Shown: in pieces, positions 53,864-57,015 of the stretch | How the letters are laid out: every line of letters starts with the position of its first letter | How positions within the stretch are numbered: position 1 is the first letter of the stretch | Origin: Obrimoposthia wandeli | Taxonomy: Eukaryota | Assembly (NCBI GenBank): GCA_977020255.1 | Contig: CDROCS010001089.1 | Location: 248,001 to 312,000, forward strand | DNA: 64,000 nt | Direction of reading: 5' to 3' | Notes under the pieces: model-generated | Databases searched by the model: none | The model's input: the letters and a program-made list of their open reading frames with translations, nothing else | Told to the model about the DNA's origin: nothing | Position numbers and translations under genes: made by a program

Positions 53864-54212
53864 GACTTTAAACTTTGCAACGTTACTCACTTTCAGTGGC
53901 ACTCTTAAGGCCATTGGCTTAATACCGCAAAGCATATTATTCAAATACAGATTCTGCCTTAGTCGTTATACAAAATATGCCGATCTAGCAGTACAACAAG
54001 AAAACAGCTTGCGTGATTTACAAGAATGATGCGCTGCAAGGCCTGCATTTGTTTAGCTATCTTCCATTGCCTTTTGATGATTAGTCGATAGAATATGTTG
54101 CAGTTAATTTCTACGGCCGCATTAATCATTAAATCTGCCGATATAATTAAAACTTCCTAAGTGATCAATCACTCGTTAATTGATTAACATTTTTCCTTCG
54201 AGCTTGCTGTAT

Positions 54213-55586
54213 ATGAAAAAAAACTTAATCTTAGATACCGATTCTTATAAACTTTCTCACTTTAAACAATATCCAATTGGCACAGAGCAAGTTTTTTCTT
54301 ATATCGAAAGTCGCGGTGGCTGTTTTGACAGCACTTTGTTTTTTGGCCTACAGAAAGCTTTAATCGAACTGAATGAAAACTTCCCAAATTGGGATGATTT
54401 TGCAGAAGCCCAAACACTGACCAAAGCTCACGGCGTTCCCTTCAACGAGCAAGGTTGGCGAGAGCTGATTGAACTAGGATATTTTCCCCTAGAGATTAGG
54501 GCAGTACCAGAAGGGAAAGTTATCCACACGCAAAATGTTTTAGTGACTGTGGTTAACACTGATCCGCGTTTTTACTGGCTAACCAGCTACTTGGAAACAT
54601 CTTTGTTACGCGCTGTTTGGTATCCTACAACCGTTGCAACACTCTCTTTTGAATGTAAAAAAGTGATTAACCGCTATATGCAGGCCACGTGCGATAACAC
54701 TGACGGCTTAGTTTTTAAACTGCATGACTTTGGTGCCCGCGGTGTTTCTAGTGAAGAATCAGCTTGTATTGGCGGAGCAGCCCATCTAGTCAATTTCTTA
54801 GGCACTGATACGCTATCCGCTGTGCGTTTTGCCAGAGACTATTACGCGGCAGGGATTTGCGGCTTCTCAATTCCCGCCACTGAACATAGCACGATTACCA
54901 GCTGGGGACGAGAGTGCGAATTAGACGCTTATCGTAATGTGCTTGAACAGTTTCCCGAGGGTTTATTAGCCTGCGTTTCCGATTCTTACGATATTTTTAA
55001 CGCTGTGGGTAACTTATGGGGTGACAAGTTAAAAGAGCAAGTCAATCAGCGCCAAGGCACTTTAGTCATCAGGCCTGATAGTGGTGATCCTGAAGATATC
55101 TTACCTATATTATTAGACACGCTAGGCGAAAGTTTTGGCTACAGCGAAAATAGCAAAGGCTATAAAGTTCTCAATGATAAAGTACGCTTAATACAAGGCG
55201 ATGGTATAAAACTTAGCTCTATTGGCCATATTTTAGAAATTATGACTGCTAAAGGCTGGAGCACCGAAAACATCGCGTTTGGTATGGGTGGTGGCTTATT
55301 GCAGCAACTCAATCGGGATACTCAGAAGTTTGCCATGAAAAACAGCGCTGCCAAAGTAAATGGTAAGTGGCGTGATGTGTACAAAGATCCCGTTACTGAT
55401 CATGGTAAACGTTCCAAAAAAGGCATTCTTGATCTACAGGGGGGGAAAACGGTTTCTATTGATGCTAGTTTATTATTCGCAACACGCCCCCATTCTGACC
55501 TCCAAGTGGTTTATCGCGATGGTCAACTAATGAATAAAATGACTTTCCAACAAATAAGAGATAATGCTACTGATTGTTTATCTTGA
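54213..55586 (+). CDS. nadV: nicotinamide phosphoribosyltransferase (NAMPT)
   Basis: DTDSYKLSH, LHDFGARG, IPATEHS, VSDSYD, IRPDSGDP, IQGDG, FGMGGGLLQ. Confidence 0.88.
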   Translation: MKKNLILDTDSYKLSHFKQYPIGTEQVFSYIESRGGCFDSTLFFGLQKALIELNENFPNWDDFAEAQTLTKAHGVPFNEQGWRELIELGYFPLEIRAVPEGKVIHTQNVLVTVVNTDPRFYWLTSYLETSLLRAVWYPTTVATLSFECKKVINRYMQATCDNTDGLVFKLHDFGARGVSSEESACIGGAAHLVNFLGTDTLSAVRFARDYYAAGICGFSIPATEHSTITSWGRECELDAYRNVLEQFPEGLLACVSDSYDIFNAVGNLWGDKLKEQVNQRQGTLVIRPDSGDPEDILPILLDTLGESFGYSENSKGYKVLNDKVRLIQGDGIKLSSIGHILEIMTAKGWSTENIAFGMGGGLLQQLNRDTQKFAMKNSAAKVNGKWRDVYKDPVTDHGKRSKKGILDLQGGKTVSIDASLLFATRPHSDLQVVYRDGQLMNKMTFQQIRDNATDCLS

Positions 55587-55728
55587 GCAGCTGCGTTATT
55601 CATAAAAAACGCGTACATTATGTAGCTTTTGATGACCGCCCAAAAAATTATTACTGAACTCAAGCTAACAGCTTTTGGCTGTTTATATTTCACTCAAGCA
55701 TGTTAATTGACATGCTTTTTTCAAAAGC

Positions 55729-56088
55729 TGTGCATAACTATTGGAAGTATTGATTATATAAGTGCCATATTTTACTTTAATTATTGTTTTATAAATAAAA
55801 TACTCGAAAATTTTTCGACAAGCCGATATTCACAAGTTATTCACAGCTAAACTTTACGAACGAAACCTGGTCAACAATCAAACAATTTTTGTATTTTTAT
55901 ACATAACCCTTCTTAGATTAGCTAATGTAAATTAACTATTGTTAGTAACTATTTGATTATTAGCAACTATTAACATATTTTGTGGACAACTACTTGGATA
56001 GAGCTTGCACAAGGTTCTGATAACCCTCTACAAGGCAGGAACGGTGTGCCCTGTGTGATTCAGGTCAAAAAACAACCGCTGTAGATAA
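55729..56088. promoter_or_regulatory. cluster of DnaA boxes with an IHF-like site
   Basis: Perfect TTATNCACA at 55729-55737 (reverse) and 55837-55845. One-mismatch boxes at 55826, 55897, 55981 (reverse) and 56080 (reverse). AATCAA-ACAA-TTT at 55876-55888. Confidence 0.65.
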
Positions 56089-56196
56089 GAGTTTGTAATA
56101 TTAGAGATGTCTAGTGTTTTTTTAATTTATTTTAAATATAAATTACTGGATCAAAACTTGCTTTTCACCCACTTTTTGCCAGATCATTATTTTCTT

Positions 56197-57015
56197 TTAG
56201 GCTTTGCTTAATTGATTGCTAACAAAAAATTGCTGATACTGGCGTGGCGTTAAAGCAGTACGTTTTTTAAAATTACGCTGGAAATGACTTTGGTCAGCAA
56301 AACCCAAATCATTCGCGGTGTTTGCCAAACTAGCACCGGATTTAAGCATTGTTCTGGCGCGCTTAATGCGTTGATCTAATTGATAAGCGTGCGGGCTTTG
56401 CCCATAACGTTGTTTAAAGCTTCTTATTAAGTGAAACGGGCTTAGATCGGTCAATTTACAAAAGTCGCTCAATGCAATATTGCTACCGAGTTTATCCATA
56501 ATCAATTCTTGCACTAAGCCTATGCTACCCATTTTAACCTCTTGCGCAATAAGCGCTGGGTTGAACAGCTGCGCACAGTATTCAATCAACATGCTTTCGG
56601 CTAATAACGGATTATTTTGAGTGCTCAAGACTTGATAAAGACGGCTAAAAGCATGATAGCTGGAACTGCAATTAAGCAAGTTTTGCTCAAATGGGCTGTA
56701 GTCATAGGTTGATGGCGGGCATACTTCTTTTTGTATCTTTGCCATCCACGCTGTCTCTATAAATAGCATCCTGTAGGACCATTTTTCAGTTTGTGGATTA
56801 CAAGAATGAGCATCACCGGGGTTAATAGTGACGAGTGTTTGGCTAGCTATTTTTTGCGTGTCAGTGCGGTTTTTATATATAGCTTGCCCATCATCCACCA
56901 CACCAAAAGAAAATTCATCATGGCTATGAGTGCTATAACAACTACTGGAATGGCTGGCACTGCGCATTTCTACGAAATCAAAGGCAGCGCTTTTACATAA
57001 ATTATGCGTTTGCAT
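56197..57015 (-). CDS. AraC family regulator
   Basis: HSHDEFSFG cupin; LSPFHLIRSF...GFADQSHFQRNFK. Confidence 0.92.
   Translation of the reverse strand: MQTHNLCKSAAFDFVEMRSASHSSSCYSTHSHDEFSFGVVDDGQAIYKNRTDTQKIASQTLVTINPGDAHSCNPQTEKWSYRMLFIETAWMAKIQKEVCPPSTYDYSPFEQNLLNCSSSYHAFSRLYQVLSTQNNPLLAESMLIEYCAQLFNPALIAQEVKMGSIGLVQELIMDKLGSNIALSDFCKLTDLSPFHLIRSFKQRYGQSPHAYQLDQRIKRARTMLKSGASLANTANDLGFADQSHFQRNFKKRTALTPRQYQQFFVSNQLSKA

What the first reader, a model, noticed from the sequence alone, without database searches (positions are those of the whole stretch)
55600..56190. Non-coding DnaA-box cluster with IHF-like site: candidate datA/DARS-type locus or origin
Seen: a 600-bp gene-free AT-rich gap holds two perfect and four one-mismatch DnaA boxes within 360 bp. 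Two of them are tandem with a 2-bp spacer (55826 and 55837). It also has a 12/13 IHF consensus match (55876) and three AACTATT repeats (55934-55972). Known: DnaA boxes plus IHF sites define oriC, datA and DARS2 in E. coli, but gammaproteobacterial oriC usually lies beside dnaA or gidA/mioC, and none of these is here. Inference: a DnaA titration, inactivation or reactivation element outside the enterobacteria, or the origin of a secondary replicon.
Basis: partly seen in the sequence, partly recalled or inferred. Interest (0 to 1): 0.7.

Follow-up and report, generated by a model that had tools for sequence, protein, structure and literature searches.

The report
DARS-like DnaA site, not origin
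[quoted passage not shown] It is not the replication origin, which lies 109 kb away.

Summary
The 610-bp gap between convergent nadV-like and araC-like genes has 2 perfect and 4 one-mismatch DnaA boxes in 360 bp, the densest cluster in the window.

It is not an origin. oriC lies upstream of mnmG, 109 kb away on the same contig. In a complete relative, GC skew flips there and not at this element.

The gap is conserved in 14 related genomes. The core is 78-97% identical where nadV DNA is only 71-74% identical.

The core (55967-56001) has the geometry of the E. coli DARS1/DARS2 cores: box I, 5 bp, opposite box II, 3 bp, box III. Two perfect IHF consensus sites flank it. A further box sits exactly 99 bp downstream, across a spacer whose sequence varies.

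There is no promoter, RNA structure, Rfam family or ORF.

Best reading: a DARS2-like, IHF-dependent DnaA control locus. Function is untested, and a datA-like role is not excluded.

The clade carrying it has no detectable Hda or SeqA and no canonical DARS core, whereas 161 of 174 Hda-bearing family members have 1-7 such cores.

The scan had already flagged DARS-like modules on other DNA of this assembly (Oleispira, Moritella). Those notes gave the lead for the geometry test.

The parts
54180..55586 (+). Upstream flanking gene: nicotinamide/nicotinate phosphoribosyltransferase (nadV-like). The element stays linked to its 3' end in relatives.
   Evidence: Pfam NAPRTase 5.8e-60 and NAMPT_N 5.7e-21. 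Synteny in 12 loci.
55667..55721 (+). Two terminator-like hairpins after nadV (55667-55683, and 55696-55717 followed by a T run). They probably insulate the element from nadV transcription.
   Evidence: Terminator scan. Inverted repeat I9. Sequence.
55729..55737 (-). Perfect DnaA box (TTATGCACA), position -252 relative to core box II. It is a remnant of a degenerate upstream copy of the core module.
   Evidence: A perfect or 1-mismatch (-) box lies at -208 to -255 in 10 of 12 full-length gaps. The upstream module is detected by the model in G185, G180 and G186 and has the DARS layout in G186.
55826..55845 (+). Tandem DnaA boxes (ATATTCACA, 2 bp, TTATTCACA) at positions -155 and -144.
   Evidence: (+) boxes at -124 to -180 occur in most lineages. 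The 14-nt extended inverted repeat with the 55729 box is I2.
55876..55888 (+). It is not conserved beyond the nearest relatives.
55946..55958 (-). IHF consensus site 1 (perfect WATCARNNNNTTR), position -35.
   Evidence: Kept in 10 of 14 orthologues, with changes mainly at the N positions.
55967..55975 (+). DARS-type box I candidate (CTATTAACA, 2 mismatches), 5 bp before box II and in the opposite orientation.
   Evidence: A box-I-like 9-mer (1-3 mismatches to the consensus; the 9-mer varies at up to 3 positions) at this offset in 14 of 14 orthologues. G184 has the 1-mismatch form.
55981..55989 (-). DARS-type box II (TTGTCCACA, 1 mismatch). This is the anchor, position 0.
   Evidence: A 1-mismatch box in all 14 orthologues; identical in 13 of 14, and TTACCCACA in the other.
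55993..56001 (-). DARS-type box III candidate (reads CTTGGATAG on the + strand, 3 mismatches), 3 bp after box II and in the same orientation.
   Evidence: The GGATA core is invariant.
56003..56011 (+). Oppositely oriented box-like 9-mer at +22. It has 3 mismatches here and 1 mismatch in five relatives. It overlaps IHF site 2.
56010..56022 (-). IHF consensus site 2 (perfect WATCARNNNNTTR), position +29.
   Evidence: Kept in 13 of 14 orthologues. The specified positions are invariant and three of the four N positions vary.
56025..56070 (.). G+C-richer spacer with variable sequence but fixed length.
   Evidence: Mean pairwise identity is 0.50, with no indels in 13 of 14 genomes. The flanks are 0.88 and 0.83 identical.
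56071..56088 (-). Conserved block ending in a DnaA box (TTATCTACA at 56080-56088), exactly +99 from box II.
   Evidence: The box is at +99 in 13 of 14 orthologues and at +95 in one. The exact two-box pattern occurs only in the element-bearing genomes plus 8 unrelated chance hits.
56197..57015 (-). Downstream flanking gene: AraC-family regulator, convergent with nadV.
   Evidence: Pfam HTH_18, HTH_AraC and AraC_binding.

Best explanation
This is a cis-acting, non-coding DnaA control locus of the DARS type.

Proposed mechanism:
1. DnaA binds the medium-affinity box II (55981) and is joined by protomers on the weak, oppositely oriented box I (5 bp away) and the weak, co-oriented box III (3 bp away). 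This is the arrangement that in E. coli DARS1/DARS2 forces a head-to-head DnaA dimer and releases ADP, so that DnaA reloads ATP.
2. Because boxes I and III are weak, the core probably needs help, as E. coli DARS2 does. The two flanking IHF sites would bend the DNA and bring in DnaA bound at the +99 box and at the upstream boxes (-144, -155, -252).
3. The element sits 2-9% of a chromosome length from oriC, so it is duplicated early.

What is shown: the sequence anatomy, its conservation, the spacing constraints, and that it is not an origin. What is inferred: binding of DnaA and IHF, and the direction of the effect on DnaA (recharging rather than inactivation).
For: (1) Box enrichment. 14 perfect boxes against 0.58 expected, and 79 boxes with at most one mismatch against 13.3 expected, summed over 14 orthologous gaps. 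Many lie in otherwise unalignable DNA.

(2) Conservation. The 60-nt core is 78-97% identical where nadV DNA is 71-74% identical. In contig C4457 the element is intact although nadV is fragmented and araC is gone.

(3) DARS geometry.
- E. coli DARS1 and DARS2 cores, read from MG1655, are box I(+) - 5 bp - box II(-) - 3 bp - box III(-). This agrees with PMC6868365 and PMC11724364.
- Window 55967-56001 has the same layout with 2, 1 and 3 mismatches, and is the only such hit in 64 kb.
- All 14 orthologues keep it. The 5-bp and 3-bp spacers change sequence but never length.
- The chance that a given box is flanked this way is 2e-4 to 5e-4.
- The only such hit in 400 kb of relative G186 is the upstream module of the same gap.

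(4) The geometry is a real motif in this group. The canonical pattern (at most 3 mismatches) hits 163 of 190 family genomes and 228 of 301 order genomes. The reversed control hits 0 and 1. A sequence model of this element picks up those canonical cores at 15-43 bits.

(5) IHF. Two perfect consensus sites lie within 77 bp, against a background of 0.23-0.30 per kb, and are conserved at the specified positions. IHF alpha is encoded in 4 of 4 relatives tested.

(6) Spacing. The +99 box keeps its distance across a spacer that is only 50% identical.

(7) No competing reading. No promoter-like site (0 found, 4.0 expected), no Rfam hit, no tRNA, RNAalifold -1.3 kcal/mol with 0 covarying pairs, and no conserved ORF.
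Against: - Boxes I and III are poor matches (2 and 3 mismatches). The call is geometric and was made after seeing the conserved blocks.
- There is no detectable sequence similarity to E. coli DARS or datA.
- Fis sites were not tested.
- The position close to oriC, downstream of two convergent transcription units, resembles E. coli datA more than DARS2.
- The clade has no detectable Hda. The usual source of ADP-DnaA (RIDA) may therefore be missing, which makes a recharging element less obviously needed.
- No binding, expression or genetic data exist.
Confidence: 0.45

Rival explanations
1. A datA-like negative element. The IHF-bent DnaA-box array titrates DnaA and/or stimulates DnaA-ATP hydrolysis (DDAH-like). 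In this clade that could replace the missing Hda-dependent RIDA.
For: - It is origin-proximal: 109 kb in this contig, 431 kb (9%) in G186 and about 0.44-0.48 Mb in G180. E. coli datA lies about 10% of the chromosome from oriC.
- Like datA, it lies downstream of convergent transcription units (PMC10950094).
- It combines IHF consensus sites with mixed strong and weak boxes.
- The clade lacks detectable Hda and SeqA, so an Hda-independent off-switch would be useful.
Against: - The most conserved part has the DARS head-to-head geometry rather than datA's layout.
- It has two IHF sites, not one.
- Only 6-8 boxes give little titration capacity.
- There is no sequence similarity to E. coli datA.
Confidence: 0.2
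2. A DnaA-bound site with another role. Examples: a transcription roadblock or insulator between the convergent genes, a DnaA-dependent regulatory site, or an origin-domain organising site.
For: DnaA boxes are clearly under selection. The location between convergent genes with terminator-like hairpins fits.
Against: - The element survives loss or decay of both neighbours in C4457 and replacement of araC in G188 and G180.
- The strict three-box geometry and the +99 spacing are not needed for a roadblock.
Confidence: 0.1
3. A binding array for a different, clade-specific DNA-binding protein, with the DnaA-box resemblance incidental. Alternatively, a small RNA gene.
For: Boxes I and III are weak matches. 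The conserved blocks extend a few bases beyond the 9-mers. A weak hairpin followed by a T run lies near 56097-56125.
Against: - Perfect consensus boxes recur at non-aligned positions in the gaps.
- No promoter-like site was found.
- There is no consensus RNA structure and no covariation.
- Folding is no better than shuffles for this copy: z = -0.16. The C5463 copy gave z = -2.36.
- Rfam gives nothing.
- The terminator-like hairpin is not conserved.
Confidence: 0.1
4. A chromosomal, dormant or secondary-replicon origin, or a crtS-like trigger site for a second chromosome.
For: A DnaA-box cluster with IHF sites. In this genome there is also an AT-rich stretch at 55745-55825.
Against: - In G186, GC skew turns from - to + at 4.136 Mb, at a cluster of 11 boxes per 400 bp upstream of mnmG. 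The element at 4.568 Mb lies in uniformly positive skew.
- The same contig holds a homologue of that oriC at C1089:412775-413215.
- There is no skew flip inside the window.
- The AT-rich stretch is not conserved.
- There is no similarity to plasmids.
- G186 is a single 4.79-Mb replicon.
- The core has no GATC sites, unlike Vibrio crtS (PMC6212839).
Confidence: 0.03

Closest known systems
E. coli DARS2 (DnaA-reactivating sequence 2)
   Same: - A non-coding intergenic locus.
- A three-box core with box I opposite to box II at 5 bp and box III co-oriented at 3 bp.
- A low-affinity core that would need helpers.
- IHF consensus sites close by.
- Further DnaA boxes in the locus.
   Different: - No detectable sequence homology.
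- Boxes I and III are weaker.
- Two IHF sites flank the core directly, rather than one IBS lying between the core and the Fis sites.
- Fis sites are unknown.
- A fixed +99 box.
- Origin-proximal rather than mid-replichore.
- The host clade lacks detectable Hda and SeqA.
E. coli DARS1
   Same: The same three-box geometry.
   Different: DARS1 has high-affinity boxes I and II and needs no IHF or Fis (PMC11724364). Here box II has one mismatch, boxes I and III are weak, and IHF sites are conserved.
E. coli datA
   Same: - Origin-proximal.
- Downstream of convergent transcription units.
- A mix of strong and weak DnaA boxes with an IHF site.
- Its action is independent of Hda.
   Different: datA has boxes 2, 3, 7 and 4 around a single IBS and no head-to-head 5-bp pair. 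There is no sequence similarity.
   Same: The same geometry. The sequence model of this element detects them at 15-43 bits.
   Different: Those cores match the consensus within 3 mismatches and occur 1-7 times per genome. This one has 6 mismatches, is single-copy, is linked to nadV, and is confined to the clade without Hda.
oriC of the same clade (upstream of mnmG)
   Same: DnaA boxes of the same extended type.
   Different: oriC has 11 boxes per 400 bp and the GC-skew switch. The element has neither and shares no similarity beyond single boxes.

Membership tests
DARS (DnaA-reactivating sequence) | Boxes I and II oppositely oriented and separated by 5 bp | tested here: met
   The E. coli layout was read from MG1655 and agrees with PMC6868365. 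Window 55967-55975 (+) and 55981-55989 (-) have a 5-bp spacer, kept in 14 of 14 orthologues. Box I is weak (2 mismatches).
DARS (DnaA-reactivating sequence) | Box III co-oriented with box II (3-bp spacer in E. coli DARS1 and DARS2) | tested here: met
   55993-56001, with a 3-bp spacer, in 14 of 14 orthologues. It is weak (2-4 mismatches), but the GGATA core is invariant.
DARS (DnaA-reactivating sequence) | Sequence homology to E. coli DARS1 or DARS2 | tested here: not met
   blastn against 5,426 E. coli genomes gave one spurious 36-bp hit in one genome.
DARS (DnaA-reactivating sequence) | IHF-binding site required for activity (DARS2) | tested here: inconclusive
   Two conserved perfect consensus matches, and IHF alpha is encoded in relatives. 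Binding was not tested.
DARS (DnaA-reactivating sequence) | Fis-binding sites (DARS2) | not tested
   No Fis motif scan was made.
DARS (DnaA-reactivating sequence) | Promotes ADP release from ADP-DnaA | not testable with these tools
   Needs biochemistry.
datA | DnaA boxes flanking a single IHF site in an origin-proximal intergenic region; promotes DnaA-ATP hydrolysis | tested here: inconclusive
   Origin-proximal and between convergent genes: met. Layout: two IHF sites plus a DARS-type core, so not datA-like. No sequence similarity. Hydrolysis is not testable here.
oriC (chromosomal origin) | GC-skew switch at the site | tested here: not met
   In G186 the switch is at 4.136 Mb, next to mnmG, and the element is at 4.568 Mb. 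There is no flip in the window.
oriC (chromosomal origin) | Conserved AT-rich unwinding element next to the box array | tested here: not met
   The AT-rich stretch 55745-55825 is not conserved in relatives.
crtS (Vibrio chromosome-2 trigger site) | Second chromosome with RctB; conserved GATC sites around the site | tested here: not met
   G186 is one 4,792,813-bp replicon for a 4.8-Mb genome. The core has no GATC. RctB itself was not searched for.
small RNA gene | Promoter, conserved secondary structure, terminator | tested here: not met

The most novel reading that the evidence does not exclude
In a clade of Oceanospirillales related to Osedax symbiont Rs1, Hda, SeqA and every canonical DARS core are undetectable. 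In that clade, this single, deliberately weakened, IHF-flanked DARS-derived module would be the main switch of the DnaA nucleotide state. It would have been rewired to work without RIDA, either as the sole recharging site or converted into an Hda-independent inactivating site.
Probability: 0.25. Interest if true: 0.8.

Novelty: new variant of a known kind. Interest (0 to 1): 0.6.

Why it matters
In the papers read here, DARS and datA are described only for E. coli. DARS2-homologous sequences are reported for seven species called E. coli-proximal, including Vibrio cholerae and Shewanella denitrificans (PMC8682772).

This locus would extend that kind of control element in three ways:
- to a different order of bacteria;
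- to a non-homologous sequence that keeps the same protein-binding geometry;
- to a lineage that appears to lack Hda and SeqA, two of the main E. coli safeguards against re-initiation.

That makes the locus a natural test of how much of the DnaA cycle can run on DNA elements alone. The family-wide and order-wide excess of canonical DARS cores over the reversed control also suggests that DARS-type modules are common in marine gammaproteobacteria.

Tried and rejected
- Origin: rejected by GC skew and the oriC homologue.
- Sigma-54 promoter in the stretch around 55994-56010: by eye the GG-to-GC spacing is 9 nt, not 10, so it was dropped.
- Sigma-70 promoter: none found.
- sRNA: no structure, no covariation, no Rfam family, and the terminator is not conserved.
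- crtS-like site: single replicon and no GATC.
- Duplicate of oriC: only single boxes are shared, and the model scores oriC at 6.8 bits.
- An 11-bp-phased array of four co-oriented boxes was my first reading of the core. The DARS layout replaced it, because the third 9-mer reads better as an opposite box and as part of IHF site 2.
- A strict Hda-DARS coupling across the order: weak. 211 of 272 Hda-bearing genomes have a canonical core, against 17 of 29 without detected Hda (p = 0.04). Many of those 29 are small, probably incomplete assemblies.
- Exact-pattern scans of genome and metagenome contigs added only one MAG and two contigs identical to the G182 lineage.
I therefore could not read this contig's oriC, or the loci in G189, G054 and G056. 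I did not try to fetch them another way.

Full report
**Where the window comes from.** The window is G000:C1089:248001-312000. C1089 is a 751,894-bp bacterial contig inside a 1.35-Gb assembly that holds many different bacteria; the dnaA family search lists 28 hits, about 20 of them full-length dnaA-like genes. The nearest public relative found by an exact 23-mer of the core is a MAG labelled Oceanospirillaceae bacterium. The DnaA of a complete relative (G186 = GCA_029027825.1, CP093399.1) sits in a 90% cluster with DnaA of 'Osedax symbiont Rs1'.

**The observation.** The gap 55587-56196 lies between the stops of a nadV-like phosphoribosyltransferase gene and an AraC-family gene, which converge on it. 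It holds:
- perfect DnaA boxes at 55729 (-) and 55837 (+);
- one-mismatch boxes at 55826, 55897, 55981 and 56080.

This is the densest cluster in the window. In 494 kb of this and a related genome, only a true oriC is denser. Its 12/13 IHF match at 55876 is real but not conserved.

**Not an origin.** The same contig carries gyrB-recF-dnaN-dnaA and rpmH-rnpA-yidC-trmE at 568-579 kb, with 4 boxes between dnaA and rpmH. It carries mnmG at 413.3 kb.

In the complete relative G186:
- GC skew is negative up to 4.136 Mb and positive from there to at least 4.78 Mb.
- Gene orientation flips at the same place.
- 11 boxes lie within 400 bp immediately upstream of mnmG.
- The element sits at 4.568 Mb, in uniformly positive skew.

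That oriC has a 70%-identical homologue at C1089:412775-413215, 109 kb from the element. Window skew does not flip at the gap. The distance to oriC is 109 kb here, 431 kb in G186 and about 0.44-0.48 Mb in G180.

**Conservation.** The gap is orthologous in 14 genomes: two other contigs of this assembly (C4457 and C5463), G001, and G180-G188 and G190 of the same family.
- The 60-nt core is 78-97% identical to the window copy where the last 300 codons of nadV are 71-74% identical in DNA.
- In C4457, nadV is in fragments and araC is missing, yet the core is identical over 120 nt.
- Summed over the 14 gaps there are 14 perfect boxes (0.58 expected) and 79 boxes with at most one mismatch (13.3 expected).

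Counting from the box at 55981 as position 0:
- The box at 0 is a 1-mismatch box in all 14 genomes (identical in 13).
- A box lies at exactly +99 in 13 of 14 genomes (+95 in one).
- A perfect or near-perfect (-) box lies at -208 to -255 in 10 of 12 full gaps.
- (+) boxes lie at -124 to -180 in most lineages.

The 47-nt stretch between the core and the +99 block is only 50% identical but has no indels. The flanks are 88% and 83% identical. That pattern fits a protein-DNA architecture and does not fit an RNA.

**IHF.** Two perfect WATCARNNNNTTR matches lie at 55946-55958 and 56010-56022, both on the minus strand. Background is 0.23-0.30 per kb. They are kept in 10 and 13 of the 14 genomes. At the second site every specified position is invariant, while three of the four N positions vary. 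IHF alpha is encoded in all four relatives tested.

**Not an RNA or a gene.**
- No Rfam match at E <= 1.
- No tRNA.
- No sigma-70-like promoter in 55400-56400, where 4.0 are expected by chance.
- RNAalifold gives -1.3 kcal/mol with no covarying pair.
- Single-sequence folding of this copy is no better than shuffles, z = -0.16.
- Small ORFs are not conserved.

**DARS geometry.** Two earlier notes of this scan, on other DNA of the same assembly (Oleispira s1-250317 and Moritella s1-234660), prompted me to test the DARS layout. Read from E. coli MG1655:
- DARS1 is TTATCCACT - 5 bp - TGTGGATAA - 3 bp - TGTGTATTA.
- DARS2 is TTATTCACC - 5 bp - TGTGGATAG - 3 bp - TGTGAAGAA.

Both are box I(+), box II(-), box III(-), as described in PMC6868365 and PMC11724364.

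Window 55967-56001 reads CTATTAACA - 5 bp - TGTGGACAA - 3 bp - CTTGGATAG, with 2, 1 and 3 mismatches.
- It is the only hit of this layout in the window.
- All 14 orthologues keep it. The spacers vary in sequence but never in length.
- The empirical chance that a given box is flanked this way is 2.2e-4, or 5.4e-4 in AT-rich DNA.
- The only hit in the 400-kb sample of G186 is a second, upstream module in the same gap, with 2, 0 and 3 mismatches.
- A sequence model of the element also detects that upstream module in G185 (37.6 bits) and in G180 and G186 (21 bits). In the window's lineage it has decayed to the box at 55729.

**The motif is real in this group.** The canonical pattern (three consensus boxes at 5 and 3 bp, at most 3 mismatches) hits 163 of 190 genomes of the family, 1-7 times each. 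It hits 228 of 301 sampled genomes of the order. The reversed control hits 0 and 1. Weak hits of my element model in other family members (15-43 bits) fall on these canonical cores. The element is therefore a diverged member of a widespread class. In the papers read here, the literature reports DARS2-homologous sequences only for species called E. coli-proximal, including Vibrio cholerae and Shewanella denitrificans (PMC8682772).

**Clade context.**
- The strong form of the element (103-116 bits) is confined to G001 and G180-G188 and G190. G189 has a 53-bit version right after nadV.
- Exactly these genomes lack a detectable Hda. TIGR03420 matches only DnaA itself there. In the two complete genomes the next-best hits are 31 bits or less. 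By contrast, 173 of 190 family genomes pass the curated cut-off.
- SeqA is absent in 4 of 4 relatives tested.
- The same 12 genomes have no canonical DARS core, against 161 of 174 Hda-bearing family genomes (Fisher 2e-12).
- This is one clade, and so one evolutionary event.
- Across the order the link is weak: 211 of 272 against 17 of 29, p = 0.04. Many of the genomes without detected Hda are small assemblies.

**Reading.** The best-supported explanation is a DARS2-like, IHF-assisted DnaA control locus. A weak three-box core would need architectural help from IHF and from DnaA bound at the +99 and upstream boxes. Whether it recharges DnaA (DARS-like) or inactivates or titrates it (datA-like) cannot be decided from sequence. 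The datA-like reading fits its origin-proximal position, its place downstream of convergent genes and the missing Hda.

It shows no sequence similarity to E. coli genomes or to PLSDB plasmids.

**Limits.** I therefore could not read this contig's oriC or the divergent copies, and I have no expression data.

Noticed in passing
G000:C1089:412775-413215 (outside the window); G186:C1 about 4,136,100-4,136,500 (L041:16100-16500): oriC of this clade lies immediately upstream of mnmG (11 DnaA boxes per 400 bp, GC-skew switch). It is 75-160 kb away from dnaA. The dnaA-rpmH gap keeps only 4 boxes.
   Followed up: partly
genomes G001 and G180-G190 (family of G001): No Hda homologue is detectable (TIGR03420 and PF00308 hit only DnaA), and no SeqA in the four tested (G186, G180, G188, G001). 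173 of 190 family genomes have Hda above the curated cut-off. Two of the Hda-less genomes are complete.
   Followed up: partly
190 genomes of the family and 301 of the order of G001: Canonical DARS-type three-box cores (at most 3 mismatches) occur in 163 of 190 and 228 of 301 genomes, 1-7 (family) or up to 9 (order) per genome. The reversed-pattern control gives 0 and 1 hits. This suggests DARS-type modules are widespread in this order.
   Followed up: partly
L002 (G000:C4457:71675-75173): In this related bacterium of the same assembly, nadV is broken into short frames and the araC gene is missing, while the non-coding element is intact. This may be a genome undergoing gene decay.
   Followed up: no
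G186:C1:4136828-4138000: The mnmG match contains 2 TGA and 1 TAG in frame. It is either a pseudogene or sequencing errors in that assembly.
   Followed up: no
L017:1717-1841, L019:1298-1417, L021:1672-1790, L052:10476: A second, degenerate tandem copy of the core module lies 230-270 bp upstream of the main one in the G185, G180 and G186 lineages. In G186 it has a perfect box II and the DARS layout.
   Followed up: partly
G054:C125:2105-2228 and G056:C34:42814-42937: 43-bit look-alikes of the element that coincide with canonical DARS cores. No nadV was found in either genome with this query. G056 has Hda; none was detected in G054. The sequences could not be read.
   Followed up: no
window 55726-55739 and 55835-55848: The two perfect boxes sit in a 14-nt inverted repeat (AGCTGTGCATAACT / AGTTATTCACAGCT). 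The box context therefore extends beyond the 9-mer, as at E. coli R1 and R4.
   Followed up: no
G000 as a whole: The 1.35-Gb assembly carries many distinct bacteria: the dnaA family search lists 28 hits (about 20 full-length dnaA-like genes) and there are 5 Hda genes over the cut-off, on several multi-Mb contigs. It is a host-associated community rather than one genome.
   Followed up: no
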